From positions 28,745,221 to 28,809,220 of the forward strand of contig NC_068992.1 in NCBI RefSeq assembly GCF_001194135.2: DNA of 64,000 nucleotides. The letters are read 5' to 3'. The DNA is from Octopus bimaculoides (Eukaryota). The notes beneath the pieces were generated by a model. It made no database searches, was not told the DNA's origin, and saw nothing but the letters and a program-made list of their open reading frames with translations. A program made the position numbers and the translations under genes. Every line of letters starts with the position of its first letter. Position 1 is the first letter of the stretch. Positions 12,728-59,684 of this stretch are shown one piece after another.

Positions 12728-13703
12728 TAGTCTCTTCCTCTCTCTCTCTCTCTCTCTCTCTCCCCCATTATTTTTTTTCCTTTGTTTCATACACAGATCC
12801 AGCACTAAATACATTGCCGAGTGCATGTGTGCAGAAGAAGGAGTGTGGAATAGAGACAGACAAACAATGTAAGAAAGAAAGAAATGTCTAGACTCAACAA
12901 AGTGCTATCCAGTCAAGAACTGGAGATCTATCAAATTCCCTACTCCTATACCCTACACCAATTTATAGCCTTTCCACTTCAGTTAAAAATCATTATTTGG
13001 TGAAAAGTGATGAACTGGCAGAATGATTAGAGCCCTGCAGTATTTGTTCTGGTTCTCTCCCTTCTGAGTTCAAATCCGGCAAAGTACTGGGGTCAAAGAA
13101 AACAATTATTCACTTACTCCAAATTTTTGACTGCTGGCTTTGTATGAAATAAGTTTTCACAGATATGGCTGTGTGGTGAAAAAGCTGCCATTGAACAACA
13201 TGTTGGGCAAGAGTCTTGTACGATAACATTGGGGCAACAAGTGTCCTGTGAGTGCATTTGGTAGACAGAAATTGTGTGGAAGTCTCTCAGATATATAATT
13301 GTTAAACAGGACAGTAAACATTAAGGCATTGGGTGAGATGCTGTACAAACAGTTGTAGTACATCATTTCGTGCAGGTGTGCCTCGTCAGGTGACTTGTCA
13401 AAAGGTACCTCATTCTTTAATCTCTGTTTCATTTATTTCAATTTGCTTGTAGCTACTTGCTTACAAGAGAAAACATTCTAGCTCATGTTTTCTCCTGTAT
13501 GTAAGTAGCTACATTGCGTAACTGAACTGAAAACTTTGTGCTTGGGAAACACTCATCAGAGCAGACTCCTTACAGCACACCCCAATCTAATGTAAATTCA
13601 AATATAAAAGACAATAAATCACTGCAGTTCTATATTTAAGAGATGAGGAATTATGTATATTATTTACATTTGATAGATATTTGTCCTCATCTTGTTTGTT
13701 GTT

Positions 13704-13749
13704 AACACAATGTTTCGGCTGATATACCCTCCAGTCTTCATCAGGTGCC
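13704..13749 (-). ncRNA. Minimal type I hammerhead ribozyme, partly decayed
   Basis: GGCAC-CTGATGA-A-GACTG..CAGCC-GAAA-CAT-T-GTGTT; one stem II mismatch; helix III ACGT mutated to ACAT. Confidence 0.7.
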
Positions 13750-13821
13750 TTGGGGAAATTTCGAACCTGGGTTCTCATTCCTAAGGTATTTTTCGATGTT
13801 GTCATTATTATTGTTATTATT

Positions 13822-13865
<44 letters not shown>

Positions 13866-13914
13866 CATCAAAAATTATCTTAGGAATGAGAACCCAGGTT
13901 CGAAATTTCCCCAA

Positions 13915-13960
13915 GACACTTCATGAAGGCTGGAGGGTATATCAGCTGAAATGTTGTGTT
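13915..13960 (+). ncRNA. Minimal hammerhead ribozyme, core mutated (likely inactive)
   Basis: GACAC-TTCATGA-A-GGCTG..CAGCT-GAAATGTT-GTGTT; CTGATGA changed to TTCATGA, plus CpG decay. Confidence 0.6.
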
Positions 13961-14045
13961 AACAACAAAGAAGATGAGGACAACTATCTATCAAATGTAA
14001 ATAATGAAAATAGTATAATAAATCACTGGACCATTTTTATGTTCT

Positions 14046-14398
14046 TTGCTGTGTGGTAAGAAGCTTGCTTCTCAACCTCAGAGCTCCAGGTTCAGTCCCA
14101 CAGCATGGCACCTTGAGCAAGTGTCTTCTACTATAGCCTCAGGCTGACCAAAGCCTTGTGAGTGGATTTGGTAGTTGGATACTGAAAGAAGACTGTAATA
14201 CGTGTGTGTGTGTGTGTGTATTTATCTCCCTGCCATTACTTGACAACAGATGGTGGTGTATTTATATCCCCATAACTTAGTGGTTTGGCAAAAGTGACTG
14301 AGAATAAGTCCTGGGGTTGATTTCTTCAACTAAAACCCTTAAAGGCAGTGCCCCAGCATGGCTACAGTCAAATGACTGAAACAGATAAAAGAATAAAA
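14046..14398 (+). mobile_element. SINE family A, near full-length
   Basis: Head, (TG)n and 3' part colinear with 4922-5363. Confidence 0.85.
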
Positions 14399-16119
14399 TT
14401 TCTTGAACTTTGATGCAGTATAATCCTACTTTTCTCAACTCATTTTAAGGACATCAACCATTGTGTTACAACAAGGCTGTATTGTAAGTATCAGCTGCCG
14501 TTCTTTAGCTCCAAGTAAAACTGAGATCCAGCAGATCAATTATGAAAGATGTGATAGCTGTAATCAACCTGTTTTTTAATTTTTTTTTTATTTTGGAATA
14601 CAATGTTCAATATGTCCTAGTAGTGAGTAATTTGAGAGAATTTGATTGCTAGCATGAGTAGGTTGACTGGCCCATGTATAAATTCTCGTTTGCAACCAGT
14701 GTTTTAATTATTGAAATAGCTTAAACATTAAAATCTGGTTTTGCTGAAAATTCTCCGCTGGGAGAGGGTACGCTGTCAGTTATGTCACAGCTGTAAATAA
14801 TAAATTACTCTGCTCAAACAGGTCAAAGGTATTCTCTATGAAGCATAACAAAAAGTGGCAAATGCTGGTAGTGGTGGTAGTGCAGGTGGTATGAAGCTAG
14901 CTGTTACAAACCGAACCACCACTGGTTCTAACTCTGCTTGAGATCATCAACAGAGGATGTGTGTGTGTATGTGTAAGTGGGAAGGTGAGAGAAAGAGAGA
15001 GAGAGTGCAAAGAGAAGGAAGAATGGAGTGTAATTGTGTGTGCATGTACATAGGCTTGCATATAGAAAGCAATAGAAGATTTGAGAAAAAGCTAACAATA
15101 GAAAAAGAGAAGGAAAGCATTATACATAGAGATTATGTGAGAACAGAAAGAGAGTGAAGATAGAGCGGGGAGGAAAGAGAGTGTGCTAGTGATAAAATGA
15201 AGGTAGAGTCATAAGTATAGAGAGTAAGTTTGTCATATGAGAGAATGCAAGAGAGAGGGGCATACAAGTAGACAAGGTGAACACTGTACCTCCACATAGT
15301 ACCTAATAAATGACAGGATCCAACCTAAGGCAGCATCAGTAAGGAGAAAATGTGACTGATTCAATTGGCATTATAGGGAGACCAGTAAACACAAGAGTTT
15401 CTTGGACAATGATGATAGATTGACAAACAGAATATTTAGCGCAAACAAACAGGCGCCAGGGAAAACATGGAACAGAATGCAGTTTATTATTTTCATAAAC
15501 TACTTCTCCCGAAAGACAATAGAAATAACGAGAAAAAAAAAGAAGATTACAATTATGGTGATGGCAGTGGTGGTGATGTCATTTATTTATTTAAGTAATA
15601 AATAATGGAAATATAAAATATTAATACGAGTATCTCACATGAAAATGTCTAGATTTGATTCTGCAGAACAACGGGTTGGAAATATGAATCCCCATCTGCA
15701 TTTAGAACCATACACATGCATCACATTCAGACACAGCAGAATACACAGCACATGCATAATACATATTTGTTGACAAACACAATGCATCTGACACATGCAC
15801 ACATGCACACAGAGCGAAATCTGTTGATAAGTTGGTGATAGCAGAGAGGTATGTTGGAAAAAAAGAGGAAAAACCTATGCATTGATACAGGAAGATATGC
15901 ATAAGCAAATTTGCACATGCGTGCACAGATGCATATGCACATACTGAAACACCTATGTAGTTTACTAACTGAATTAAAAATATGAGAGAAAGATGCACAT
16001 TTATAAATGCACATATTCAAGTGAATTTTTTTCGATATGTATCCACCTGTGCATATGCATATCTATATGTGAATATGTTCACATATACAACTGTATATCC
16101 ATGCACACATGCATTATAT

Positions 16120-16187
<68 letters not shown>

Positions 16188-17049
16188 ATATGTACATACT
16201 TATCTGTGTGTGTGTATGCATGCACACACACAAATCAATGCAAATTGATTATTATCATCATTATTGATTTGTCTCTTGTTGTTTCAGCTGTTGTTGTCGG
16301 TGGTGCTGTTGTTGTTGTTGTTTCTGTTGTTGCAGCTATCAATAATTAGATTTTCATTACGTAAAGTTACAAGCAGATAACATTACAAGTATATTATTGT
16401 GTGAAGTTTGAATCAGACAATGTATATAGATTGGATCTGTTCAAATTCTCCTCTTATAACCTTCAAGTTACCATCCACGCCTCAGCCATCCACATTGTCG
16501 TTATTATTAATACCACAGGTTCCATTGTCATATCTATTGTTAACATGGAATCAGCTGAGATTGGAGAAAAAAAAAAAAAAATTGAAGTATGTATAGTTTG
16601 CATTGGGGGAGGGGATGAGGAGAAGGGGGAACGGGAATTTATAAATTTATAGCAGAACATTTCTTGAAAACTTCTAGAAATCCACTGACGTCCTCTAACC
16701 TTACCAACAAGAGCTGTTCTCCCCTCCACTGCCACACATACACATTACACTGAGAGATCGAACTACTTCAATAGCATAAGAGACTATGGTTGATCAAAAT
16801 GCCAGTAAGAGCTTTGTTTCACGTCTCATATGAAGTGTATATGCATCTGCAAAAAATAGTTATATATATATATATATCATCATTCATGTCTACTTTTCCA
16901 TGTTTGTATGGGATGGATATAATATACATACATACATATAAATGTGTATGTGTGTGTGTGTCTGTACATATATGTATACGTATGTGCATAATATATATTT
17001 ATATGTATGTATTTATGCATGTATGTATGTCTATATATATTTTTCTTTT

Positions 17050-17227
17050 ATTCTTTTTCATTTACTTGTTTCAGTCATTTGACTGTGGCCATGCTGGAGC
17101 ACCACCTTGAAGGGTTGATCCCAGGACTTATTTTTTTAAAGCCTAATACTTATTTTATCAGTCTCTTTTGCTGGACTGCTTGGTTACAGTGACATAAATA
17201 CACCAATTGTCAAGTGGTGATGAGGAA

Positions 17228-17272
<45 letters not shown>

Positions 17273-17283
17273 NNNNNNNNNNA

Positions 17284-17332
<49 letters not shown>

Positions 17333-17370
17333 ACTTCTTTCAGTTTCTGTCAGCCAAATCCACTTACAAA
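17050..17370 (-). mobile_element. SINE family A, 3' two-thirds
   Basis: TTTACTTGTTTCAGTCATTTGACTG... reverse complement of the family A 3' end, with (CA)n linker and a small gap. Confidence 0.8.
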
Positions 17371-17869
17371 GATACATATATCATCATCATTGTTTTAATG
17401 TCCACATTTCCATGCTTGCATGGGTTAGATGGAATTTGTTGAGGCAGATTTTCTATCATCAGGTGCACTTCCTGTTGCCAACCCACACTTGTATCCAAGT
17501 AAGGTTAATATTTCCCCATGATTAGACATGTTTTCAAAAATCAAGGACACTGCTTGTATGACTGTGACACTTGATTACAACCATCAAATGATGACATCAC
17601 ACACAGACAGTAACACGCATATGCACGTGAGCACATATATATATACACAACAGGCTTCTTTCAATTTCCATTTAATGAATTTATTCAAAAAGCTCTGGTC
17701 AGCCTGGGGCTATAGTAGAAGACACTTGCCCACAGTGCCATGAAGAAGGATTGAATCTGGAACCATGTTTTTAGGGAAGCAAACTTCTTACCACATGCAC
17801 ACATACCCATGTATATATATTTGAGCTATGGTCTTCCCAGATCTATACTGGGCATATTTCACATCTCAC

Positions 17870-18115
17870 AAATTCTTTCAAATGCTTGGAAGGCTTCCTA
17901 GAAGTATTTGGTAGTAAGAATGAGGTGGAAAATGTTCAGGGAGCTATTACTTCTGCTGGTATCAGAGCATTTCTCTCTCTCAGAGTGGAGAGCAGATTGT
18001 ATGATGCTTGCATATACAAAGTGCAAATCAGCATGGTTGAGAGATATGGGCCTTCAAGGTGAATGATTAGTGAAAGCTTAAAAGAAATGAAGTGAGCATG
18101 CTCTCCTGGATGTGT
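17870..18115 (+). pseudogene. RTE LINE post-RT fragment
   Basis: WKMFRELLLLL...LRVESRLYDACI...EIW...RNEVSMLSWMC; same family as 56420-56950. Confidence 0.65.
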
Positions 18116-18145
18116 ATCAGCTATAAATGGGAACCAAGTCATGGA

Positions 18146-18714: not shown

Positions 18715-18715
18715 A

Positions 18716-19320
18716 AGGCTTCTATCCTGGATGTAGTGCAACTGACCAGATATTCACTTTATGGCAGATCTTTGAGAAATCATGGGAATATTACCAAAAA
18801 GTCTGTTTGCTTTGTAGACCTTAAAAAGGGGTATGACTACGTGTTGCAGAACATGCTGTGGAGGGCTTTTGCAGGAATTTTGAATTAATGGGCAACTTCT
18901 GGTTGCTGTGAAGTCTCTATTCATACGCTCTGAAGTTTGTATTCAAGTAAATGGTGCAAGTCAAAAGCCTTTCTATGTGGGTGTTGTACTTCAAAAAGGG
19001 TGAGTGTTGTCACCTATCCTTTTCATAATTTTTATAAACTAAATTGACATGTGCAACCATTGTAGGAATGATTGGTGGGTATGAGATTGGTCAGAAGATG
19101 TTTGCAGATGAACTGGGGCTTCTTGGTTCATGAGAAAGGGATCTCCAGCATGTATTGAATGGGTTTGTTACTGAGTGCTGCAAGGCAGGGATGAGAATTA
19201 CTAAGACAGTGACACGAGTTCTCTCAAGAAGTTTTTCCCAGTGCCCTCTGTATGCTAGTGGAACATTATTGAGGCAGGCAGAGCAGTTTAAGTATCTCAG
19301 GGCCATATTCATGACTGAGA
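18716..19320 (+). pseudogene. RTE (Expander/Rex3-like) RT core, inverted relative to the 3' part
   Basis: GFYPGCSATDQIFTL..CFVDLKKGYD..LQKG*VLSPILF..MFADEL..FKYLRAIFMTE. Confidence 0.8.
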
Positions 19321-19399
19321 CACACTTTATAATTAGAATCATATTAAATTCATTCTAGAAGTAGGAAGAGAAATTCTATTCCTTCTCATGGTTTCAGTC

Positions 19400-19627
19400 A
19401 TTGCTGGAAGATCTTCCTAGGGACACAGTGAGGAATGCATGTGTCAAGTTCCAGAGCCATCTTGAGGCTGTGACAGAAGCTGAGGGTGGTTACTTTGAGT
19501 AAATTGTTATCTCCCTACCACAATCTAGTTGATATATTTTGGCTTAAAAAAAAATACTGATTTTTGAATGGGATATCGTGTCTTGCCTTTATGCAAAAAC
19601 TGTCAAATTTAGCCCAAAAGACCTTAC
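19400..19627 (+). mobile_element. Tc1/mariner 3' remnant (transposase C-terminus plus putative TIR)
   Basis: EDLPRDTVRNACVKFQSHLEAVTEAEGGYFE* fits the mariner/Tc1 C-terminal AC.SF..RL.AV..A.GG.FE pattern. Confidence 0.6.
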
Positions 19628-19659
19628 AGAATTCTAAACTATGTGGTTATGAAGTGAAC

Positions 19660-19985
19660 CATACATACATTGTCTTTGGACTATTGCCATGCTGGAGCAC
19701 TGCCTTGAAGCGTTTAGCTAAGCAAATCAACCCCAGTACTCATTTTAAAACCTGATACTTTAATGGTCTCTTTTGTTGAACCACTAAGTTACGGGGACAT
19801 AAACAAACCAACATTGATCATCAAGCAGTGGTGAGGGATAAACACAAACATACACGATATACTTCTTGCAGTTTCAGCCTACCAAATCTATACACAAGGA
19901 TTTGGACAGTCTAAGGCTGCAATAGAAGGCATCTTGCCAAGTTGTTGCACAATGAAGCTGAACCTAAGATCACAAGGTTGAAGAA
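19660..19985 (-). mobile_element. SINE family A, diverged
   Basis: Reverse-complement similarity to 4922-5363. Confidence 0.7.
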
Positions 19986-22065: not shown

Positions 22066-22483
22066 AATATTAACATCATTTAATGTCTGCCTTCCATGCT
22101 GGCATGGGTTAGATGATTTGACTGAAACTGATAAGTTNNNNNNNNNNTATATATATACATATATATACATATATATATATATATATAAAATTCAAGAATC
22201 TAGAACTTTGTGTCAAAAACACAGAGGCACTTGTCAAAGTCAGGCAAGTACTTTGCTATGAAATTTAAGGGTCTACCCTTAAGACACTATTGTAACTTCA
22301 CAGCTAACACATGCACACACAACTATCTATGTCGCATAACACATATGTCCAGTTCTCCACCATTCCCACACAAATAAAGTATGTATATTCAAAGATATAT
22401 TTATGTATCTATGTATACAATTAATTACATGTATTTGTGTAGCAACACAAAAACTATATTTTACTAAACTTAAACCAATATAT

Positions 22484-22804
22484 TTCGTTTTTGGATTTGG
22501 TTTGCAAGATTCTTTATGTGAGTTCATGTGTTGAAGCATATTCTGTTGTGGCTGGGGAGAGTCATTCTCTTTTAGTGCCTTATAATTTAACACACTCACT
22601 GGTAAAATTTCCACTCATTTACTTATTTATTTTTCTAAAATTTTTGTTGCATCTTGCAAGCTTTTCAATAGTTGTTGACTCTGTCCATTATTGAAGCTGC
22701 GTTCTTCTAGTTTGTTTGTGCACATGTGTGTGGGTCAGTGTGTGCGTGTTTGTGATATGTATGTATGTGTACGTTTGTATGTATGTATTCTGTCTGCATA
22801 TTCA

Positions 22805-22839
<35 letters not shown>

Positions 22840-22890
22840 ACTTCTGTCTCCCCGTGTGAGCATGTCTGAGTGTGCTTGTGTGTGTGTGCA
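22484..22890 (-). repeat. Inverted PLE terminal arm (pLTR-like), about 57 nt longer than the right arm
   Basis: 22541-22890 is the reverse complement of about 24800-25199; 22484-22540 has no partner on the right. Confidence 0.85.
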
Positions 22891-22894
22891 TAGT

Positions 22895-24552
22895 ATAGTA
22901 TGGGTAGTGGATAGTATGGATGTGATTTCACTCTACCTATCTATAGACATAGATTTTACTGTGGAGAAATGCATTGAGTTAATCTGTGAGAGTGAAGTAG
23001 AGTTCCGTGAGGTCAACATGAGGGAACTGTGCCTCCTCGTTAGATTACGCTATGACAGTGACTATTTAGACAACCATGACCTCAGTAGATTCTGCCCCAC
23101 CAGGTCACAGTGGGAAAGACCACCCATCATCACCTCAACAATGAAGAAAAGCACTGCAGAATGCTAGTGTGGCTGGACCGTACCCACCCAAGACCCTGAG
23201 AAAAACAATCAGGTGAAAGAAATGATTACACATGCAGTAGGGGCCAGTGTAAGAACCACCTTGAAGAACTACATATTAAAATTTAACAAGCAATTATACA
23301 TGCAAGTTCAAGGTGCAGCCATTGGTGTTGGTGTAGCTGGAGATATGGCCAGCCACTTCATGACCTGATGGGACAGAAAACTTAAGCAATCCTTAGCAGA
23401 ACAGTCCACAACTCTTCTACTCTACAGTAGGTATGTAGATGACATTAATATCATAGTTAAGACCAACTATAATAACAGTAATGTAGAAACTGAGAAGAAC
23501 GTAATGGAGAGCGTCCAGATTGATGCTCTCCATTAGCAAGTAGCTAACTCCATCCACCAAAGTATCGAGGTAACTATAGATTACCCCTCTAGGCTCCCCA
23601 ATAATAGACTCCCCGTCCTTGATACTGAACTTTGGTTAGAGACTGTGAACAACAGAGTGCAGCTCCTCCACTGCTATTACATGAAACCCATAGCTCTGAA
23701 ATATGTTGTTCACAAGAACTCAGCTTTGTCACAAAACATGAAAATTAACACACTGATAGCAGACTCAGTTAGGATAATGAACAATGTGTCCCCATTATGC
23801 AAACCCTATGAAACGAAGAAACATGTACAGAACTTCATGCACCGCATGCAGTTCTCTGGATATAATCAGAAAGATAGGGTTCAAGTATACAGGGGTGCTA
23901 GAAAGAAGTTAGATAACATTATATATAATGATACCAGTGGTACCTGCCGTAGATATAGAAGTAAAGACTGGAATAGGATACAAAGAACTTGTGACAAAGC
24001 AAACAGGGTGAACACGTGGTATAAAACCAACTAATATCAAGGAGTGATGTTTGTAGAGGCCACAGCCCATGGAGAACCAGCCTGTAGATTTAGGAAAGCT
24101 CTGAAGAAGACCAAACTCAACATTAAGATTGTTGAAAAGCCAGGGAACTCTGTCAGATCACAACTATGTAGGACGTACCCCTTTGAGAATACCTTGTGCA
24201 CCAACGATAACTGCATGGTATGAAGGATTAGCCCTGGCATTAGTTGTAGAACTAGAAATGTAGTTTACAACATAAGATACATAGAAGGTGCTTGTAAAGA
24301 CATGAACATGACATACATAGGGGAGACATCTAGGAGTATTGTGGAATGACTAAATGAACATTTGAGACAATATGACGACAAAAAACAGTCCTCCATACTC
24401 TACCAACATGCCAAGGACCAATATAGAGGCAACCTAGGTCAACTTGACATCTGCATTTTATCTAAGCACCCAAAAGACCCAACACTTAGACAAATACAGG
24501 AGTACGTACTCATAAATGAAACTTCCCCAGTACTAAATAGTAAATATATGTA
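22895..24552 (+). pseudogene. PLE reverse transcriptase + C-terminal GIY-YIG endonuclease (disrupted)
   Basis: SMDVISLYLSID; FNKQLYMQVQGAAIG; YSRYVDDI (23432-23443); LPVLDTELW; Cys-rich linker; SCRTRNVVYNI..TYIGETSRS..EH..SSILYQH..E.VLINETSPVLN; several in-frame stops. Confidence 0.92.
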
Positions 24553-24799
24553 GTAGTTATCATATGTAGTAGATATCATACCCCCATACTACAGGTAGAG
24601 TAGAATAGTGGGCTGTTATGTAGATAGATGTATGTGAATGTGGGTGTGTGTATGTGTGTATATGTATATGCACATGTATGTAGGCATATGGATATGAATG
24701 GAAACAGATAGACGTACAGACAGATAGATACATAGGTTATATGACCAGACAAGCACACATACACAAATGAAGACTGAAACACATGACCATATATACACA

Positions 24800-25199
24800 C
24801 ACACTGCACTTCACACAAGGACACATATGGAGACACATGTCCACACATATGGAGATACACATCCATACATACAGACACAGTTGCAAAAAACCCATACACA
24901 CACACCCACAAACACATGAATATGCAGGCTGAATACATACAAACATACACACATACATTTACACATACACACGCACATACATGCATATGCAATGCATACA
25001 TACATACATGTGTATGCACACACATGCGCACAATCAAACTAAAAGAATGCAGCTTCAATAATGAACAGAGTCAACAACTATTGAAAAGGTTGTGAGACGC
25101 AACATAAATTTTAGAAAAATAAATAAGTAAATGAGTGGAAATTTTACCGGTGAGTTTGTTAAATTATAAAAAGAATGACTCTCCCCAGACACGACAGAA
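24800..25199 (+). repeat. Right PLE terminal arm (pLTR-like), with CA-rich low-complexity part
   Basis: Inverted copy of 22541-22890; left boundary approximate because of low complexity. Confidence 0.8.
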
Positions 25200-25700
25200 T
25201 AAACCAATATATCTATCTATAAATTATATTCAAGTGACCAAATAGTGGAAGATACACAGTTATAGAGATTATTTACAAACAACAGTTATTTACTCCATTG
25301 TGTACAGAAGGAAGGCAGATGGTCCAGACAATGGTTAACATTCTACAATAGAGCAGATTTTGTACAAGTTAGAGATCTTGCTAAAAACTGGCTGCACTGA
25401 TACAAACACACCAATTCCTCCCAGCTCTCAGAAGTTCTAGCATTTATATCTAAAAATATCTATCACTATGTACAGCCAGTGCAATGTGTGTGCATGCATG
25501 TGTGTGCATGCATGTGTGTTGTTGCTAATATATTCAATAGTCATAACATCAAAAATGTCTCTTGAGAAAAACACTTTTTGAAATTTGGTGTGAGTACCTT
25601 TACTTTTCTGACATACAAAACAGTATTGTTAACCAGAGGTCTATCATATAATTTTAATGATTTAAAAATGAAGAATATTAATATTAGAGTACATTTGTGG

Positions 25701-51835: not shown

Positions 51836-54371
51836 TAGAATTGAAGTTCTGTTAAGCCATCCCTCACAACTCTTCTAACACCTACTCTTCCATCAATCTT
51901 CTATGTTACCCTATTTTTTTTTCACTTCTTCTCTGCATCAAACTCATTTCCTATCCCTAATCATCTGTCACACTATTTTCTGTTCTTCTATCCAATTGTC
52001 TCATATTCACCTTGGACCACATTTCTCTCTCTCTCTTTCTTTAGATGGGCAAGACATGTATTCACCTCTTAAACCTTTAGTGTTCTGGTTAATCTGTCAA
52101 ATGTATCAAATATAATACTCATTTGTTCACGTTATTTTGAATTATTCAGATTCAAGAAGAGTGTCCACAATATTTGCTTGCAACTTTGTTCGTTTTTTAC
52201 ATACAGATTTGAAACTTTATCCATGGGTGTTTATATACCAGTGGATTATTGCTATGTAACTTTAGCTGATCTTGCTGATTAAATTTGACTTTTATGGGCA
52301 GGTAAATTTAATTAACAGCTGTAAAAGCAAAATCATTGTGGACAAACACTAAAATTGAAATTCTTAATGCATTTTACCTATTTGATTTGTTACTAAAATT
52401 ATCTCAGATGTCAACCGCCAACAATTTTGAATCTTTTCAAGATGGGGTACATCAATTTGAATTAATTAAAATACAGGTATAATCAGTACAAAACTCTTTT
52501 ATTAGTCAATATACCATTGGCTATGTACTCTTATACAATTTAATGAATACATCTACATAACAATGCATCTAATAAAAATGCTCATTAACAGGAAAGGCAA
52601 AGGTGAATACAGGAGTATAACATACTGAAAATGAATATGTATTTCTCACTTTAACATAATATTTGTAATAAAATGAAAGTAATATATAATAGTTTTACTA
52701 TCAAACAACAAAATATAGTTATGCCATATTACTATCGTGAAACTGTCCAAACTACCTAAATGTCAATATGATTCAACCAAAGACAAATCAGTTGTTTTCA
52801 TTTATATTTTGTGAATCAAAATGAGTAAAACCTTTGAAGTCGGAACCACTACTTGCTGATACCATATCGTTAAAAACTAAGGTAAACACTTCTCTTCAAA
52901 TGTTGAAAAAAACTAAGAAGTCTCAAAAATTTCACCGTATTTTTACTTGAATAAAGGCAGGAAAGGCATTATCTCAAAGCTACGAGAATTCAATAATGTG
53001 ATTTGTTTACTTTTTTAGTGATTTCATAGAGAAATCATATACGGTCAGATTTGGCTGGTTCAAACAAATGAAGGGGATTATTTTTCAGCCAGTTATGGTC
53101 GGTTTAAACACTAAAAGGTTAAGCGAGATATTTTCTCCTCTATCATAGTTTCTTATCTTTCTATTCTATACTTCACTCAATTGAGGGATCTTATCTTGTA
53201 GATACATGGCAACCTCACTGGTGCTGGTGCCACATAAAAAGGACCTGGTACATTCTGTTAAGTTGTTGGCATTAGGAAGGGCATCCAGCTATAGAAACCA
53301 TGCCAAATCAGACATAGAATTTGGCACAGCTTTTGGCTTGTCTGCTCTTCTTGAACAGCCCAACCCATGCCAGCATGGAAAAGGGGATGTTAAATGATGA
53401 CGATGATGATGATTGAAGAGAGAATTTCTTTCAGTATGGTAGTTATTCTATCAGTCTCATACTTTGGATCATTAAGCTGTGGGACACATAGAGACACACT
53501 AAAATATCAGCTCTTTTGTTTCTTTTTTTCTGTACACATAAACACACACACATTTACACAACAAATTTATTTCAGTTTCCATCTACCAAATCCACTCATA
53601 AGGCTTTGGTTGGGTCAGGGCCATAGTAAAAGACACTTATCTAAGGTGCCATATAGTGGGACTGAACCTGAAACGATGTGGTTGAGAAGCGAACTTCTTA
53701 CCACACAACTATGTCTGCACCTTTATATATATGTATATAATATATAATGAATACATTAAAAGAGAGGCTTGTGTCATGTGACTGCTGTTCTGAACAGAAT
53801 TTCACCATTGTTGAAAATCTCTTCTATTCACACAGCAGAGATAAAATCTTATTGTTACATTACTTGTCTGCATTGATATTTAAGTTGCTAATTCCAGTTA
53901 CTTCATTTCCTCTCTTTGCTGATATCACTAGATTTCTATTGTTACGTATAATGTCATCCTCTCAGTATTTGGGATCCTGTTGCTGCAAGCTGTGACATTC
54001 CATAAGGCCAAGAAATGCTATCTTTTACAACACTGCAACCATGAACTGATAATCCTGCTATATGAGTTCATCTCGGTCAAGAAACATTTTTCAGCAAATA
54101 AAATTTCATCTGGGTCATTGCAGCTTATTAACTTTTTTGATACCAACTCGCCTAAGACTGCCCCAGGTTCTATAACATAGACATACTTGGAGAGTGACTG
54201 CTACTATTGCTAACATAACGCTGTCACATCATCCAACAGATGGTGAGTTGCCTACAACAGTTGGATATTTGTTTACACCAACATTTGGAGAGTGACTGAT
54301 ATTAACATAATGCTGACGAATTTGGATAGATAAACAGAACCTGTATAACTAGACATTTCCCAGACTATTCT

Positions 54372-54409
54372 TCTTCTGAGGATGGGCCTTTGCACCTGAA
54401 ACATAAAGG
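54372..54409 (+). ncRNA. Degenerate minimal hammerhead of a second family
   Basis: TCTT-CTGAGGA-T-GGGC-CTTT-GCACCT-GAAA-CAT-A-AAGG: stem I TCTT/AAGG, core intact, helix III ACGT decayed to ACAT, stem II imperfect. Confidence 0.45.
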
Positions 54410-54779
54410 TTTTGTGAAACTTACCACATTGTCAGAATCTTTCCTATTTTTTTCTTTTCTTTCCCTTCTTCTATAAACTTATTGTTTTTAAATGGTCTAA
54501 ATTATAATCTTTCATCAAAATTTTATGCTAATTTGTTCCAACCCCAGCTTAATAATGATAAGGTTGTTTTGCTAAATTCTTCATTGTTTAACAGATTAAT
54601 TGAAACAAACGCAGTATATGTTGACAGAAACATGGTAACAAAAAGGTTAATAATAAGCAGTGCAACTTATTAGTAAGACACTTTCCATCAACATTCATTA
54701 AAGATTAAATCACAGCTTCTGTCATTAGTTTCCTACTCAGAAATAAAGGTTGAGATTTGGTTCGCTTTCCACGAATCAC

Positions 54780-56260
54780 TTTTTCAGTTGGTTCCTGTGT
54801 CTTTTTTGTATGCCTTTTCTACTTTTTACCCAATACCTCATTTTACCTATGCATTTGGTAATAACGTGATCTTCCCAACTCTGCTTTCCATTCTTGTATG
54901 CCCTCATATACACCTTTTTACCAATCTTGCTATGTTTTTCCAAGCACTTTTTCTTTTCTTGCCAGGTAGCAATTTATTGCAGACTGATTTTACTTGCCTC
55001 ACAAACATCAACTCAGCAAGTGAGCTACCTGCTGGTGTATTCAGATTTGGTGTCACAAGGTACACTTTTAAAAATTGTTGTAGAGATACCACCTCATCTG
55101 TGACTATCTTATTTGATTTTCTAAGAGCTCTTTTGAAGGTATCAACAAAGCATTTTTCCTGTCCATTAGATCTAGGATGGTATGGTGCCATAGTTATATG
55201 TCCCACAGCAAATGTTTCACAAAATTTTTTTAATTTGCTAGACACAAATTGCGTTCCATTGTCAGACACTATTTTGTCTGGGATGTCAAATCTTGCAAAC
55301 AATTTGTGTATAAAATTTATCACTGTTGAGGAAGTTGATTTTTTATACTTACAAATTTCAGGCCATTTTGAGAAACTATCATCTACCACTAAGTAGTGAG
55401 CACCATTTAAAAGACCAACGAAATCTATGTGCAGTCTCGAACACAGAACATCTACTTTTGGACAATGTTTACTTTTTATCGTGGGCAAATCTTTAGTTCG
55501 TTTTGGTTTACATCCAGGTGTTCCACTCTGTTTCATTGCAATTTTTTGTTTCAGTCCCTCAGCTACATTCGAAACTTCAAATAGACCAACTATATTTCCA
55601 CACAAAACACTTATGGGCATATTCCATACTTTAAATAGTTCCATCCACTCTGTGCTGAATAAACGAAGTGAACTTTTTAACACATATATCTTTGACTTCT
55701 TTGTTTGACCTCGAAATGGTACATTACATATGAATTCATAGAAAAAATATAATCTATTACCTGTAACACCATGTGCTACCTTTTTAGATTTAATTAATTT
55801 TGGCTTACTGACATATTTCCGTGATTTTTTGTTTATAATGGTAATATCACTACCAGTGTCCAATTGCATTTTAACACTTGTATTTCTAATTTTCACCTTC
55901 ACAAATTTTCTCATCATTATACTACTAATTTCTTCCGATAACATACTATTTATTGGTTTTCCTTTGTTCTGCCGTTTTGTCATCTTTGCTCTACAGTGTG
56001 TCTTTATGTGTCCGATATTACCACAACAAAAGCACTTTGCTTTTTTAAATGGACAATTATAACTTAGGTGTATATCTCCACGTGCAAAATAGATTTATTT
56101 CCTGATTTTTGTTGTGTTTCTTAAAAAACACTTTATTCTGACTATTTCACACTTGCTTTACTTGAAAACAATCTTAAAGTTCAATTTCCTCTGTGTCATG
56201 TCTTAATTTGACTATCCTTCTGACACTTGCTGTAAGGTTATATCTGTTTGTGAAATAGAA
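54780..56260 (-). mobile_element. Ty3/Gypsy remnant: gag tail and CCHC knuckles, aspartic protease, integrase; RT/RNase H absent
   Basis: TLQQVSE..VKLRHDTEEIE; CPFKKAKCFCCGNIGHIKTHC; LDTGSDITII; HIDF..VSDNGTQF..PYHPRSNGQ; frameshifted W..H..KRHRNQL tail; no LTR found. Confidence 0.9.
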
Positions 56261-56419
56261 GATACTTAGAGGAGTGAGATATAAGTCATGTCTTATAAAA
56301 TGGTATGGCCTTCAGCTGCAACTAAGAAAATCTTTAACAGCAGCTGAAATTATGGTCTTTATAAGCCTTATAAATTAAAAGTTTCTTGCCAGTAGGTGTG
56401 TTGGCTAACTTCATGGGTG

Positions 56420-56950
56420 TATTACATATGCATAGTCCCCTACATTTAAAGCACATTCAGCACCAACATTAAACAATCTGCCCTTCACTCTGAGGAAAAA
56501 AACCTTTGTTACCGCAGCTGTAGTAGCTCCCTGAATTTCCTCCAGCCTGTTCTCATCCTGGTTACTATACTTTTAGAGGAACCTTCAAGCTCCATCCTCA
56601 CCCCAGCTAACAAAAGCTATCAATTACTTTTAGTGGACCATCTGGGCATCTAAGAAAATCTATTTCCAGTGCTCATAGTAGGTACTGCTCAAGTGTCTCT
56701 ATCACATATGAAGCTTACCTTCTCTGTTACTCTGATTGTGATCTCACTAAATCTCTCATGAATCCATAGTTTACAATGGGTACATCACATAAAGTCTTTA
56801 CTTACTCCTTCGCTGCACACTAAGTTAGACTTTTTCCCACAAAATACCAATGTCTTGTCTAAATTTGCTGTAAGACCTCTTGATTCCAGGTGCTTCTATG
56901 CCTGGAATTTGCTCTCAATCTCCTGTATAGATCCAACAATTTGCTGCAAT
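56420..56950 (-). pseudogene. Degraded RTE LINE RT/post-RT fragment
   Basis: LESRGLTANLDKT..; CPDGPLKVIDSFC*LG; TRMRTGWRKFRELL; LRVKGRLF (with frameshifts). Confidence 0.65.
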
Positions 56951-57044
56951 ACTATTATGATAATACAGTTCTATATTTAAGAGATAAGGTATTATGTACA
57001 TTATTTACATTTGATGGATATTTGTCCTCATCTTGTTTGTTGTT

Positions 57045-57090
57045 AACATAACGTTTCGGCTGATATACCCTCCAGCCTTCATCAGGTGTC
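57045..57090 (-). ncRNA. Minimal type I hammerhead ribozyme (core intact, one stem I mismatch)
   Basis: GACAC-CTGATGA-A-GGCTG..CAGCC-GAAA-CGT-T-ATGTT. Confidence 0.8.
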
Positions 57091-57162
57091 TTGGGGAAAT
57101 TATGAACCTGGGTTCTCATTCCTAAGGTATTTTTTGATGTTATTATTATTATTATTATTATA

Positions 57163-57236
57163 CAGGTCACTGCCTGGAATTGAACTCGGAATCTTGGGGT
57201 TAGTAGTCCGCGCTCTTAACCACTACCCTATATGCC
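57163..57236 (-). promoter_or_regulatory. tRNA-like Pol III internal promoter (left arm)
   Basis: Reverse complement: TAGGGTAGTGG A-box variant, GAGTTCAATTCC B box, GGACTACTAACCCC anticodon-like arm. Confidence 0.75.
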
Positions 57237-57298
57237 AGTGGGCAATTATGGAGTGAATTTTAGGGCTTAGAAATCTAATTCACTCCATAATTGCCTAC

Positions 57299-57369
57299 GG
57301 GCATATGGCGTAGTGGTTAAGAGCATGGGCTACTAACCCCAAAATTCTGAGTTTGATTCCAGGCAGTGA

Positions 57370-57373
<4 letters not shown>
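57299..57373 (+). promoter_or_regulatory. tRNA-like Pol III internal promoter (right arm)
   Basis: A box TGGCGTAGTGG (57306-57316); B-box-like GAGTTTGATTCC (57349-57360). Confidence 0.8.
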
Positions 57374-57429
<56 letters not shown>

Positions 57430-57481
57430 CAACATCGAAAAATACCTTAGAAATGAGAACCCAGGTTCGAAATTTCCCCTA

Positions 57482-57527
57482 GACACCTGATGAAGGCTGA
57501 CGGGTGTATCAGCCGAAACGTTGTGTT
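57482..57527 (+). ncRNA. Intact minimal type I hammerhead ribozyme
   Basis: Stem I GACAC/GTGTT; CTGATGA; extra A; stem II GGCTGA/TCAGCC; GAAA; loop-less palindromic helix III ACGT; predicted GUU cleavage after 57522. Confidence 0.88.
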
Positions 57528-58384
57528 AACAACAAACAAGATGAGGACAAATATCTGTCAAATGTAAATAACGTAAATAATATGATAATGTATAGGTAGG
57601 AAACTGCTTGATGATATATAGAAAGAGACTAAGCAACTAGAAGTAAAATAAAAGTGAGTGAAGGAATGAGATGAGATGTTTATCAAATTGCCCAAAGTGG
57701 CAAACAAGAGTAAGAGTGAGTGAGAGAGAGAGAGAGAGAATGAAAATTAGTGGGTTGGAGAAAGTGATACATTACACCAGACATTACACCAGACCAAGTG
57801 GTTGCTATCGTTTGACCAAATGGAATGAACAATCACCATAACTCTGAGAGAGTGAAAAGATATAAATCTTCCAGTTGTGATGAATAATGGACGATTTCCC
57901 ATGATACCTGAATTTTGCCATTACCAAGACACAAAACAGTCATTTAATCATTTAATCAAATTGACAATTATTTTTACTAGTGTTAAGTCAAGGAATTTTA
58001 TGCCGCTTTAACTAAGATGAGAAATGGGAACAATCTTGAAGTACATTTAAATAGCAGTAGAAAACAAAATAAATCCTTGTGGAATTCCTGTTTTACCATG
58101 AATATTCTAATGAATAAACTTCTTGACTGTTGAAAATGACAAATCTTTCAGTGGTCTGTAAATTATATGGTAATAATTTTGCAAGTATAAGCTGGCAAGC
58201 TGATGGAATTCTTAACACTCCAGGCAAAATGCTTAGCAGCATTTCGCCAGTCTTTAAGTTCTGAGTTCAAATTTGCCTTTCATCTTTTCAGGGTCAATAC
58301 AATAAGTACCAGTTATTGACTTACTCCAAAATTGCTGGTATTGTGCCAAAATTTGAAACCAATATTTTTTAAATATAGTATTAT

Positions 58385-58720
58385 TTCATTTTCGTATTTG
58401 ACTTGTAAGATTCTTGATGTAAACTCATGTGTTGAAACAAATTTTGTTGTATCTTGGAAGGGTCATTACACCAGTAATAAACACAAGCGCTGGTTTAATT
58501 TCACTTCATTATTAATCAGTTGGTTAGTTACTCAACCAACTAACTAATCAATTGCTTGCAACTTTGACAAAAATCTGATTGATTGATTAACAGAGTGATT
58601 AAGCAAGCAGTTAGTTAGTTAGTAGGTTAAATAACTAACCAATTCACTAATAATAAAGAAGTAAAACTGAACCAGTGCATGTATTTGTTGTTGGTGTCAT
58701 GTCCTCTGAAAATGCAACAG
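58385..58720. mobile_element. Mini fold-back derived from PLE terminal arms
   Basis: First 83 nt are 65/83 identical (ungapped, hand count) to 22484-22566; arms 58442-58559 and 58603-58720 are inverted; TSD AATATAGTATTAT/AATATAGTATCAT. Confidence 0.85.
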
Positions 58721-59684
58721 AATATAGTATCATAGTTTTTAATTCAAATTTTTATATCATTAAACTACTCAGTGGACCAGTAAAAAAATGTTTTAAGCAA
58801 AAAACAAAAGCAGTCATTTTAAAATATAAGTAGCTTTATACATGTATATTGTTGTGACTCAGAGTGGCATGTAGTAATTATGTAATTATTGTAATAATTA
58901 TTGATTTCAAATTTTAGCAAAAAACCAGAAATTTTGGGGAAAAGAGTAAGACTATTACATCGATCACAGTGGTACTTATTTTATCAACCCTGCAAGGATG
59001 AAAGGTAAAGTTGATTTTGGTGGAATTTGAACACAGAACATAAAGATGGACAAAATGCTCTTAAGCATTTTGCCATGTCTGCTAACGATTCTATCAGCTC
59101 ACCACCTTGAAGGTAAACTTGACCTCAGCAGAATTTGAATTCAGAGTGTAAAGGCTGAGGTAATGTTGCTAAATATTTTGCCTGATGTTCTAATGATTCT
59201 GCCAGCTCACTGCAAATGTAGTAATCCTTGGTAGCATTTTATAATTCAATCAAAGTGTAATGCCTTCACCTAAGAAATATTTCAATAATCTAGTAATTAT
59301 TATCATCATCATCATTTTAACAACCACTTCTCCACGCTTGCATAGGTTGAATGGAATTTGCTGAGACAGATGTCTGCAGCTGGATGCCTTTCCTGTCATC
59401 AACCTTCACCTATTTCCAAGTCCAGTAATATTCTGTCAGAACAGACATGTTTTCATGGAAGCCTGGAAATAAAGGACACTGCTTGCATGACTGACACTTG
59501 CTTACCACTATCACATGATCAAGGAGGCAGTAATACACACACACAATGGCCTTCTTTCTGTTTCAGTCTATCAAATCCTCTCACAAGGCTTTGGTTGGCC
59601 TAGGTCTATAGGGGAAGATACTTGCCCAAGAAACCATGAGGTTAGGAAACAAGCTTCTTACCACATTGTCACTTTGCTGGTTAA

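What the first reader, a model, noticed from the sequence alone, without database searches (positions are those of the whole stretch)
13613..58733. A Penelope-driven fold-back system: one coding element and three non-coding palindromes share one insertion geometry
Seen: four insertions (13625-14016, 22484-25199, 56966-57580, 58385-58720) each have a 10-13 bp AT-rich TSD and an inverted left arm that overhangs the right arm by a family-specific length: 25 nt in both hammerhead copies, about 55-57 nt in both PLE-end copies. Termini are fixed within each family, and the right terminus overlaps the TSD by a few matching nt. Established: PLEs (RT + GIY-YIG) have direct or inverted pseudo-LTRs and carry minimal hammerheads. 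Inference: priming at a fixed internal RNA site aided by target microhomology, followed by a fold-back/template switch, makes MITE-looking palindromes that are class I products. One such family has acquired a tRNA head. All four have the long arm on the left (small sample).
Basis: partly seen in the sequence, partly recalled or inferred. Interest (0 to 1): 0.9.

Follow-up and report, generated by a model that had tools for sequence, protein, structure and literature searches.

The report
Penelope-like retrotransposon insertions in an octopus
The four insertions are real products of Penelope-like retrotransposons in an octopus genome, and their lopsided inverted-repeat shape is the already published signature of that element class; the only partly new item is a short non-coding hammerhead-carrying family with a tRNA-like front end.

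Summary
Each has a 9-13 bp AT-rich target-site duplication (TSD) and an inverted left arm. That arm carries an extra family-specific terminal stretch: 24-25 nt in the hammerhead (HH) family and 55-60 nt in the other family (here the PLE-end family). No assembly gap lies inside any of them.

The element at 22484-25199 is a decayed, 5'-truncated Penelope-like element (PLE) with reverse transcriptase followed by a GIY-YIG endonuclease. In its family the extra stretch is nt 28-82 of the PLE reading frame.

Related copies in Octopus sinensis and O. vulgaris have the same fixed ends.

The geometry is the published PLE signature: an inverted truncated upstream copy plus a "tail" at one end only. In 2024 the tail was explained by reverse transcription starting at two internal RNA sites on both cut DNA strands.

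Microhomology is not established. Unequal arms argue against a simple fold-back.

The HH family carries a minimal PLE-type hammerhead. A second, independent copy confirms the tRNA-like head as part of the unit, although tRNA detectors reject it.

Verdict: new members of a known kind; modest interest.

The parts
13613..13624 (.). HH1 left TSD AATAAATCACTG (right copy at 14017-14028)
   Evidence: 12/12 identical direct repeat at both junctions.
13625..13649 (-). HH1 tail: 25 nt found only on the left (inverted) arm. It is the distal 3' end of the unit.
   Evidence: Four-arm alignment. Same sequence and same terminus as HH2.
13650..13832 (-). HH1 left arm (inverted copy). Its hammerhead (about 13700-13749) keeps the CUGAUGA core (at 13731) but has mutations in helix II and helix III. 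The inner end lies in (ATT)n.
   Evidence: blastn self-comparison, 90% identity. Core CTGATGA is kept, but helix II and the ACGU palindrome are mutated.
13833..14016 (+). HH1 right arm ending at the short 3' terminus. The hammerhead core is mutated (CTTCATGA, GAAAT; 13919).
22471..22483 (.). PLE left TSD TAAACCAATATAT (right copy at 25200-25212)
   Evidence: 13/13 identical.
22484..22538 (-). PLE tail: 55 nt only on the inverted arm. It equals nt 28-82 of the PLE ORF (codons 10-27, ...CFNT*THIKNLANQIQKR).
   Evidence: Alignment of short and long ends. Translation is homologous to the N-terminus of the O. vulgaris 1231-aa ORF.
22539..22837 (-). Inverted, 5'-truncated copy of the 3' region (pseudo-LTR). 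The inner limit is uncertain because of GT-rich low complexity.
   Evidence: blastn 22539-22782 against 25201-24963 at 84%, and 22780-22831 against 24941-24890 at 90%.
22916..24553 (+). Decayed PLE ORF starting at RT motif A (SMDVISLYLSID). It has YVDD at 23432, a CxxC linker, GIY (VVYNI, 24260) and YIG (IGETS, 24317). One frame, 6 in-frame stops.
   Evidence: Translation. 56% identity to an O. vulgaris protein, E 2.6e-174. Alignment A1. Weak Pfam RVT_1, and GIY-YIG in homologue P0011.
24554..25199 (+). 3' region (pseudo-LTR) ending at the short terminus. The ATG of the next ORF unit is at 25175 and the copy ends 27 nt into it.
56956..56965 (.). HH2 left TSD TATGATAATA (right copy at 57581-57590, TATGATAATG)
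   Evidence: 9/10 match.
56966..56989 (-). HH2 tail, 24 nt
56990..57264 (-). HH2 left arm: minimal hammerhead at 57045-57090, (ATT)n, and the tRNA-like module at 57164-57259.
   Evidence: Relaxed hammerhead descriptor hit. nhmmer for the tRNA-like module.
57277..57372 (+). tRNA-like head of the right arm (A-box-like TGGCGTAGTGG, B-box-like GAGTTTGATTCC). It sits 5' of (AAT)n at 57373-57435.
   Evidence: Rejected by ARAGORN at default settings and by the Rfam tRNA model. Weak nhmmer similarity to other SINE heads, E 0.008-0.03. Recurs in L006 at 19148-19267, E 2e-17.
57481..57528 (+). Intact minimal type-I hammerhead: GACAC / CUGAUGA / unpaired A / GGCUGA-loop8-UCAGCC / GAA-ACGU-U / GUGUU. Predicted cut after 57522.
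   Evidence: Only strict-descriptor hit in the window; 0 hits in 200 random windows. Helix II is 95% paired with 2 compensatory pairs across 7 arms. No Rfam hammerhead model matches it.
57529..57580 (+). HH2 right-arm 3' module ending at the short terminus, 58 nt past the hammerhead cut site.
58372..58384 (.). PE2 left TSD AATATAGTATTAT (right copy at 58721-58733, AATATAGTATCAT)
   Evidence: 12/13 match.
58385..58440 (-). PE2 tail (55-60 nt). It is homologous to the PLE tail at 78% and codes ...CFNT*VYIKNLTSQIRK.
58441..58720 (.). PE2 non-coding arms (58461-58704, 73% identical) around a 43-nt non-palindromic centre. The right end is the short terminus ...GCAACAGAAT(AT).

Best explanation
The four features are old insertions made by the RT/GIY-YIG machinery of Penelope-like elements (PLEs) in an octopod genome.

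One is a 5'-truncated autonomous element. Three are short non-coding relatives: PE2 keeps only the 3' module of the same PLE lineage, and HH1 and HH2 belong to a separate SINE-like family. That family consists of a tRNA-like head, (AAT)n, a body, a minimal hammerhead and a 3' module.

Proposed sequence of events:
1. The endonuclease makes staggered cuts in AT-rich DNA, which produces the 9-13 bp TSD.
2. Each of the two exposed 3' ends primes reverse transcription at one of two fixed internal sites of the element RNA.
3. The two cDNAs run towards each other and are joined, giving a head-to-head pair.
4. One outer end therefore stops at the proximal site (short) and the other at the distal site (short plus tail).

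For a short RNA both cDNAs reach or nearly reach the 5' end, so the product looks like a palindromic MITE.

Shown here: the TSDs, fixed termini, one-sided tail, RT + GIY-YIG ORF, hammerhead motif, and recurrence in two other Octopus species. Inferred from published work on PAc: initiation at two internal sites and extension of both strands. Not shown: how the two cDNAs are joined, and which PLE mobilises the HH family.
For: - TSDs and termini.
- Arms and tails.
- ORF: a single frame with RT motifs, CxxC linker and GIY-YIG. Best relatives are PLE-type proteins with DKG, RT and GIY-YIG motifs.
- A third PLE-end copy in O. sinensis (L004 13921-14618) has the same long terminus ...AAAACGAA and a short end at ACAACAG.
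- A young (99.8%) head-to-head PLE pair in O. vulgaris (L001) has a short left outer end, while its right outer end reaches about 36 nt into the tail.
- All six insertions scored have one short and one longer end. If each end chose independently, the probability would be at most 0.5^6 = 0.016.
- The tail of the PLE-end family is ORF nt 28-82. This parallels PAc, where RT starts 111-118 nt into the ORF (PMC11167929).
- The HH short and long ends lie 58 and about 82 nt past the hammerhead cut site. In PAc the distance is about 85-92 nt.
- Hammerhead. It fits the published min-HHR description: long helix II, helix I of 4-5 bp, an unpaired nucleotide 5' of stem II, and no helix III (PMC4209133).
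- Literature for the geometry: PMC8557442.
- Unequal arms in the PLE copy, in L006 and at the PE2 centre favour two separate cDNAs.
Against: - No autonomous partner sharing the HH 3' module was found in about 240 kb of octopus DNA examined.
- No hammerhead was found in the PLE-end family or in the young O. vulgaris PLE with my descriptors. Canonical EN+ PLEs are said always to carry one.
- Tail lengths (24-25 and 55-60 nt) fall outside the published 30-40 bp.
- HH1 is a loop-free palindrome whose two arms end at the same place in a microsatellite. Two independent cDNAs do not obviously produce that.
- PAc showed no difference in start-site use between the two strands, which does not by itself explain why each insertion has exactly one tail.
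- Samples are small: 2 complete HH copies and 3-4 PLE-end copies.
- No empty orthologous site was examined.
Confidence: 0.8

Rival explanations
1. A single target-primed cDNA starts at one fixed site, and its 3' end snaps back or template-switches onto itself. The return strand is then joined to the other target end by microhomology, producing the palindrome and its asymmetry.
For: - HH1 is a loop-free palindrome centred in (ATT)n(AAT)n.
- HH2 has only an 11-17 nt spacer.
- There are 2-5 nt overlaps between the short end and the TSD in three of five junctions.
Against: - A snap-back copy should run to the very start of the first cDNA and into flanking DNA. That would give equal ends, not a shorter fixed end.
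- Short ends are fixed to within 1-4 nt in independent copies and across species, which is not expected for microhomology capture.
- Arms are grossly unequal in the PLE copy (about 0.35 against 2.3 kb) and unequal in L006.
- PE2 has a 43-nt non-palindromic centre.
- PAc initiates without homology to the target.
Confidence: 0.15
2. The palindromes are copied as whole units. A master copy that is already an inverted dimer is transcribed through, and the hairpin-shaped RNA is reverse transcribed from the short site to its 5' end. The tail then marks the 5' end of the RNA rather than a second priming site.
For: - The left terminus is exact in both HH copies and in three PLE-end copies.
- One site near the terminus separates all long arms (C) from all short arms (A).
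Against: - Apart from that one site, the four HH arms form a star: 0 sites group left against right in the body and 31 are singletons.
- The inner junctions differ in every copy. They lie in the microsatellite in HH1, upstream of the tRNA-like module in HH2, and inside it in L006. A unit copied whole would keep one junction.
- The PLE copy joins an inverted pseudo-LTR to a truncated RT, which is not a unit that recurs.
Confidence: 0.07
3. The non-coding palindromes are DNA-transposon MITEs or foldback elements that only resemble PLE ends.
For: They have long inverted arms, small size and AT-rich targets.
Against: - TSD length varies from 9 to 13 bp.
- The true termini (for example CAGTTCTATA... 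and ...AAATAATA) are not inverted repeats of each other.
- PE2 and L004 share their ends with an RT + GIY-YIG element, and the tail is PLE coding sequence.
- The HH arms carry a PLE-type hammerhead.
- A solo 5'-truncated HH fragment with the short 3' end exists.
Confidence: 0.02

Closest known systems
Canonical EN+ Penelope-like elements (Penelope/Poseidon type), including PAc from Anolis carolinensis
   Same: - RT followed by a C-terminal GIY-YIG endonuclease.
- Pseudo-LTR, heavy 5' truncation, and an inverted truncated copy upstream.
- A tail at one end only.
- AT-rich targets with variable TSDs.
- Unit ends that lie inside the 5' part of the ORF.
   Different: - Tails are 24-25 and 55-60 nt instead of 30-40 bp.
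- No hammerhead was detected in the coding family with my descriptors.
- The window copy is dead (6 stops, truncated at RT motif A).
Minimal PLE hammerheads (min-HHR; Cervera and de la Pena 2014; Lunse et al. 2017)
   Same: - CUGAUGA core and an unpaired nucleotide 5' of a 6-bp helix II.
- A 5-bp helix I.
- GAAACGU with the palindromic ACGU in place of helix III, which is the dimer type.
- Pairs of motifs 100-700 bp apart on opposite strands were already reported.
   Different: Here the opposite-strand pairs are resolved as complete insertions with TSDs and a one-sided tail. Cleavage activity was not tested.
Sm-alpha / Sj-alpha SINE-like elements of schistosomes
   Same: A tRNA-derived, Pol III-type head combined with a hammerhead in a short, high-copy, non-coding retroposon.
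   Different: - The schistosome elements carry a canonical type-I hammerhead that Rfam recognises, and they occur largely in tandem.
- The octopus family has a minimal hammerhead, a PLE-type 3' end with a tail, and head-to-head insertion.
Animal non-LTR retrozymes and short non-autonomous Penelope elements (Heliconius; vertebrates, bioRxiv 2026)
   Same: Non-coding, hammerhead-bearing or pseudo-LTR-derived elements proposed to depend on PLE enzymes.
   Different: - Retrozymes are tandem arrays that give circular RNAs through canonical hammerheads.
- The copies here are dispersed single insertions as inverted dimers, with a tRNA-like head.
L1 twin priming (inversion with 5' truncation)
   Same: The second cut strand also primes on the element RNA, giving an inverted segment joined to a direct one within one TSD.
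   Different: - In L1 the second primer anneals anywhere inside the RNA by microhomology, so the inverted part lacks the 3' end.
- Here both primers start at fixed sites near the 3' end, so both outer ends are 3' ends.

Membership tests
Penelope-like element (EN+, C-terminal GIY-YIG) | PLE-type reverse transcriptase (motifs SMDVxxLYPSID, GGAIG, YVDD; N-terminal DKG motif) | tested here: met
   The window ORF has SMDVISLYLSID, GAAIG and YVDD. The DKG region is missing through 5' truncation but is present in all full-length relatives in alignment A1. Pfam RVT_1 is only weak, E 0.03.
Penelope-like element (EN+, C-terminal GIY-YIG) | GIY-YIG endonuclease downstream of RT, after a Cys-rich linker | tested here: met
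   VVYNI...YIGETSRS...E...H...N aligned with the relatives, and a C..C..C..C linker. Pfam GIY-YIG in homologue P0011 has E 5.7e-4 and 20.6 bits against a cut-off of 22.6, so it is below Pfam's threshold. The window copy itself gives no Pfam GIY-YIG hit.
Penelope-like element (EN+, C-terminal GIY-YIG) | Pseudo-LTR and/or an inverted 5'-truncated copy next to the unit | tested here: met
   22539-22837 is the inverted copy of 25201-24890. L001 shows pseudo-LTRs and a head-to-head pair.
Penelope-like element (EN+, C-terminal GIY-YIG) | Short tail extension present at only one end | tested here: met
   Seen in 6 of 6 insertions scored (HH1, HH2, PLE, PE2, L004, L001). Lengths are 24-25 and 55-60 nt, and about 36 nt in L001, against the published 30-40 bp.
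Penelope-like element (EN+, C-terminal GIY-YIG) | Variable-length TSD at AT-rich targets | tested here: met
   TSDs of 12, 13, 9-10 and 13 bp, 85% A+T.
Penelope-like element (EN+, C-terminal GIY-YIG) | Hammerhead motif in the pseudo-LTR | tested here: not met
   For the coding family there is no hit with the strict or relaxed descriptor in 22484-25199, PE2, L004 or L001 4000-15200. Atypical variants, as in D. virilis, would escape my descriptor. The feature is met for the HH family.
Minimal (PLE-type) type-I hammerhead ribozyme | Conserved core CUGANGA...GAAA...UH with helices I and II, and a palindromic stub in place of helix III | tested here: met
   57481-57528 (+) and 57045-57090 (-). There were 0 strict hits in 200 random windows and 0.06 relaxed hits per random window. 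Helix II is 95% paired with 2 compensatory pairs. The HH1 cores are mutated.
Minimal (PLE-type) type-I hammerhead ribozyme | Match to a curated hammerhead model | tested here: not met
   No Rfam hammerhead family matches at E up to 10. This is expected, because the Rfam models require helix III.
Minimal (PLE-type) type-I hammerhead ribozyme | Self-cleavage, as a dimer | not testable with these tools
   Needs in vitro transcription of dimeric constructs.
tRNA-derived SINE | 5' head derived from a tRNA with internal A and B boxes | tested here: inconclusive
   - There are A-box-like TGGCGTAGTGG and B-box-like GAGTT(C/T)(A/G)ATTCC motifs at tRNA spacing.
- ARAGORN finds nothing at default settings and only a tRNA-Pro call at a 70% threshold. 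The Rfam tRNA model gives no hit.
- There is weak similarity to other SINE heads.
tRNA-derived SINE | Head, body and 3' module recur together as one unit in independent copies | tested here: met
   HH2 has it in both arms. L006 19079-19895 in O. sinensis has the same head + (AAT)n + body + hammerhead + short end. HH1 and the L004 fragment are 5'-truncated.
tRNA-derived SINE | 3' end shared with an autonomous partner | tested here: inconclusive
   No partner was found in the window or in 7 loci (about 176 kb). The inference rests only on the hammerhead type and the insertion geometry.
MITE / foldback DNA transposon | Terminal inverted repeats at the very ends and a TSD of fixed length | tested here: not met
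   The ends are not complementary to each other because of the tail. TSDs are 9-13 bp.

The most novel reading that the evidence does not exclude
The HH family may be a true SINE of Penelope-like elements. In this reading a Pol III-type tRNA-like head is fused through (AAT)n to the hammerhead-plus-initiation module of a PLE. It is mobilised in trans and inserted as head-to-head dimers.

Its copies would also expose two rules of PLE integration that are not yet described:
- Exactly one proximal and one distal initiation per insertion (6 of 6 here).
- A C-to-A signature in the last 9 nt of every short end (4 of 4 short ends against 0 of 2 long ends). This looks like realignment of the nascent cDNA on an adjacent 9-nt repeat, reminiscent of the telomerase relatives of PLE RT.
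Probability: 0.35. Interest if true: 0.55.

Novelty: new member of a known kind. Interest (0 to 1): 0.32.

Why it matters
The finding shows that raw sequence alone can recover the PLE insertion signature. It also shows that MITE-looking palindromes in cephalopod genomes can be retroelement products, which matters for repeat annotation: MITE finders and SINE finders will misfile them.

The dispersed minimal hammerheads counted by the thousand in animal genomes were ascribed loosely to "truncated PLEs". Here some are resolved as complete insertions of a SINE-like family with defined ends.

If the one-tail-per-insertion rule and the short-end signature hold genome-wide, they constrain the still unresolved second half of the PLE integration reaction. 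None of this changes the known picture of what PLEs are.

Tried and rejected
**RNA and tRNA detectors**
- Rfam at gathering threshold on the whole window gave nothing.
- Rfam at E up to 10 on the HH2 region, the tRNA-like part, the hammerhead and L007 gave only chance hits: mir-885, snoRNAs and a CRISPR repeat.
- ARAGORN found no tRNA in the window or in three of the fetched loci (L004, L006, L007).

**Tests that did not discriminate**
- The four-arm informative-site test was meant to separate arms made at insertion from whole-palindrome copying. The arms form a star and the test does not discriminate.
- The consensus RNA fold of the PLE-end 3' module shows no significant structure (z +0.3 to +0.8).
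- The HH stem around the short site is significant in one copy only.

**Searches for more copies or for the species**
- Exact look-up of the window's 359-aa integrase, to fetch more DNA of the same species, was not on record.
- A scan of metagenome contigs for a 28-nt HH word gave 0 hits.
- The species of the window was not identified. Its repeats are 75-92% identical to O. vulgaris and O. sinensis, and none of the HH or PLE-end families occurs in 62 kb of O. bimaculoides.

**Other**
- The PDB sequence search with the O. vulgaris PLE protein gave no hit.
- L007 (unknown ENA assembly) has an HH-like palindrome, but I could define neither a TSD nor a tail there.
- In L001 the outer ends sit in (TA)n and include an older, rearranged segment, so its tail length (about 36 nt) is uncertain.
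- I considered whether the tRNA-like palindrome in HH2 is a later nested insertion. It has no TSD, its ends are symmetric, its arm divergence (about 10%) equals that of the HH arms, and the same head-body linkage recurs in L006. I therefore rejected that idea.

Full report
**1. The observation**

The window is 36% G+C, full of microsatellites and SINE-like repeats, and has eight runs of N. None of the runs lies inside any of the four insertions. The closest (22138-22147) is 324 bp left of the left target-site duplication (TSD) of the coding element. The warning about gaps therefore does not affect the structures themselves.

| Copy | Coordinates | TSD | Match |
|---|---|---|---|
| HH1 | 13625-14016 | AATAAATCACTG | 12/12 |
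| PLE | 22484-25199 | TAAACCAATATAT | 13/13 |
| HH2 | 56966-57580 | TATGATAAT[A/G] | 9/10 |
| PE2 | 58385-58720 | AATATAGTAT[T/C]AT | 12/13 |

The TSDs are 85% A+T against 64% for the window.

Self-comparison shows the inverted arms. Alignment of the arms in a common orientation shows the one-sided extension: 24-25 nt in both HH copies, and 55-60 nt in PLE and PE2. A search of the whole window with each arm finds no further copies. Other inverted pairs in the window are ordinary SINE copies kilobases apart.

**2. What the coding element is**

From about 22916 to 24553 a single frame with six stops and no frameshift reads as follows:
- RT motif A (SMDVISLYLSID), GAAIG and YVDD
- a Cys-rich linker
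- a GIY-YIG endonuclease (VVYNI ... YIGETSRS)

The best relative is a hypothetical protein of Octopus vulgaris (56% identity, E 2.6e-174). Aligned full-length relatives show the DKG motif, the RT core, the linker and GIY-YIG in that order. Pfam sees RVT_1 and GIY-YIG only weakly.

The element is therefore a dead, 5'-truncated, canonical EN+ Penelope-like element (PLE) on the + strand. Its right end is a 3' end. Its left arm is an inverted copy of the 3' region plus 55 extra nucleotides.

**3. Related copies elsewhere**

By looking up octopus proteins I fetched seven loci, about 176 kb in all, from O. vulgaris, O. bimaculoides, O. sinensis and an unnamed ENA assembly. I searched them with profiles of the arms.

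- *O. sinensis L004, 13921-14618.* This is a third non-coding copy of the PLE-end family. Its long terminus is the same (...CCAAATCCCAAAACGAA), its tail is 59 nt, and its short end lies at ...ACAACAG. Here the tail is on the right in the locus orientation.
- *O. vulgaris L001.* This locus holds a 99.8% identical head-to-head pair of a related PLE with pseudo-LTRs, inserted in (TA)n. Its left outer end stops at the homologous short site. Its right outer end runs about 36 nt into the tail, after a small rearrangement.
- *L004, 17426-17498.* A solo, 5'-truncated HH fragment with the short 3' end.
- *O. sinensis L006, 19079-19895.* An HH copy with the tRNA-like module, (AAT)n, body, hammerhead and short 3' end. 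Its turning point lies inside the tRNA-like module, its arms are unequal, and its left outer end is lost.
- *L007.* A more distant HH-like palindrome.

**4. The tail is coding sequence**

In the PLE-end family the last 27 nt of the short form and the 55 nt of the tail together read MTLP(R/S)(H/Y)N(R/K)ICFNT(R)THIKNLANQI(P/Q)KR.
- The frame is open in L004.
- It is homologous to the first 27 codons of the 1231-aa ORF of the O. vulgaris element, which starts at L001 10588.

The unit therefore ends inside the start of the next ORF, 27 nt (short) or 82 nt (long) into it. This explains why the tail is far better conserved between PLE, PE2 and L001 than the rest of the arm. Both O. vulgaris ORFs stop inside the GIY-YIG domain, so I did not find a fully intact copy.

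**5. The hammerhead**

No Rfam model matches, even at E up to 10. I wrote a descriptor after the published minimal hammerhead: helix I, CUGANGA, an optional unpaired base, helix II of at least 5 bp, GAAA, a palindromic stub, UH, and helix I.
- The strict form hits once in the window, at 57482-57527 on the + strand, and never in 200 random windows.
- A relaxed form also hits the other arm of HH2 at 57045-57090 on the - strand, with 0.06 hits expected per random window.

The motif reads GACAC / CUGAUGA / A / GGCUGA-8-UCAGCC / GAA-ACGU-U / GUGUU.

Both HH1 copies have mutated cores. Across seven arms, including the distant L007 pair, helix II is paired in 95% of cells and two pairs change on both sides. 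Slid controls give 18-51%.

The architecture agrees with the published description of PLE minimal hammerheads. That paper also noted pairs of motifs 100-700 bp apart on opposite strands (PMC4209133). I found no hammerhead in the PLE-end family or in the young O. vulgaris element.

**6. The tRNA-like head**

- ARAGORN at default settings and the Rfam tRNA model reject it. ARAGORN calls a tRNA-Pro only at a 70% threshold.
- It has A-box-like and B-box-like motifs at tRNA spacing.
- It has weak profile similarity to the heads of other SINEs in the window and in O. sinensis (E 0.008-0.03).

That it belongs to the HH unit is better supported. It is in both arms of HH2 with the same divergence as the rest of the arms. 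It has no TSD of its own. The same linkage recurs in L006 (E 2e-17).

**7. Comparison with what is known**

Craig et al. 2021 describe PLE insertions as follows (PMC8557442):
- They are heavily 5'-truncated.
- They often have a partial tandem copy (pseudo-LTR).
- They often have an inverted 5'-truncated copy at the 5' end.
- They have a 30-40 bp tail that is often present at only one end.

Frangieh et al. 2024 showed the following for the Anolis element PAc (PMC11167929):
- The protein cuts and extends both DNA strands at AT-rich sites.
- Reverse transcription starts at two adjacent sites inside the RNA, 111-118 nt into the ORF.
- Initiation occurs without homology to the cut DNA.
- The genomic tail is the sequence between the two start sites.

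Short non-autonomous Penelope elements are reported in butterflies. Animal retrozymes have been proposed to be non-autonomous PLE derivatives. PLEs are known to be recently active in O. vulgaris.

**8. Mechanism and rivals**

I favour priming on both cut strands at the two internal sites, with the two cDNAs joined in the middle. The reasons are:
- Both outer ends are 3' ends at fixed positions.
- The arms are unequal in the PLE copy (about 0.35 against 2.3 kb), in L006 and at the centre of PE2.
- The inner junction differs in each of the three HH copies.

A snap-back of a single cDNA would give equal arms and equal ends. It remains possible for the loop-free HH1.

Copying of a whole palindromic master is unlikely. 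The inner junctions differ, and the four HH arms form a star with 31 singleton differences and no left-against-right sites in the body.

A DNA-transposon origin is excluded by the variable TSDs, the non-complementary ends and the coding tail.

Microhomology at the short end (0, 2, 2, up to 5 and 0 nt) is not distinguishable from chance at AT-rich junctions.

"Long arm on the left" has no meaning for a palindrome beyond strand convention.

**9. Two points known accounts do not cover**

- All six insertions scored have one short and one longer end. If the two ends chose sites independently, this would happen with probability at most 0.016, so the two initiations seem coupled.
- In the HH family all four short ends read G(T/A)AAATA(A/G)T, where both long arms read (G/A)TACATAAT. 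The 9-mer GTAAATAAT lies immediately upstream. The short ends thus look like a second copy of the upstream 9-mer, as if the nascent cDNA had realigned.

Both rest on very small numbers.

**10. Verdict**

Its microhomology and fold-back parts are not supported. The families themselves are new members of a known kind, and the HH family is a plausible SINE of PLEs.

Noticed in passing
window 14005-14016 and 57570-57580; L006 about 19885-19895; L004 about 17488-17498; compared with window 13650-13660 and 56990-57000: Every short 3' end of the HH family has A where both long arms have C, 7 nt from the end (4 of 4 against 0 of 2). The short ends read like a repeat of the adjacent 9-mer GTAAATAAT. 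This may reflect slippage or realignment at the start of reverse transcription.
   Followed up: partly
window 56966-57047 and 13625-13706 (- strand RNA): An 8-9 bp stem AGAUGAGG(A)/(U)CCUCAUCU joins the first bases of the tail to a site 40 nt upstream and brackets the short start site. The z-score is -3.0 in HH1 and only -0.6 in HH2.
   Followed up: partly
L001 4131-15103 (O. vulgaris OX597831.1): A 99.8% identical head-to-head pair of PLE copies with pseudo-LTRs, inserted in a (TA)n microsatellite. The ORFs are 1262 and 1231 aa, and both stop inside the GIY-YIG domain.
   Followed up: partly
L001 1329-1402: A type-I hammerhead-like motif with a palindromic CCUAGG helix III and a 33-nt loop II, unrelated to the HH family. 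A 72% inverted partner of the surrounding repeat lies at 18769-19065.
   Followed up: no
L006 19345-19690: A nested insertion ending in poly(A) sits inside the (AAT)n of the O. sinensis HH copy. The left arm of that copy is fused to a common octopus SINE at a TTCT(C) microhomology.
   Followed up: no
L007 15975-16390 (ENA ERZ21867824, species unknown): A diverged HH-like palindrome with a 100-nt asymmetric centre. One arm has helix II GGCCAA/TTGGCT, giving two compensatory pairs. I could define no clear TSD or tail.
   Followed up: partly
window 54904-55983 (- strand): An open 359-aa ORF encodes an LTR-retrotransposon integrase (rve). The closest named relatives are K02A2.6-like proteins of O. 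bimaculoides at 57-64% identity.
   Followed up: partly
window 57208-57330: The Rfam mir-885 match (26.7 bits, gathering score 66) is simply the hairpin formed by the two tRNA-like modules. It is not evidence of a microRNA.
   Followed up: yes
window 6673-6766, 14040-14400, 62413-62506 and many others: Several families of tRNA-derived SINEs are dense in the window. They are 75-87% identical to copies in O. vulgaris, which places the window in an octopod, but the species was not identified.
   Followed up: partly
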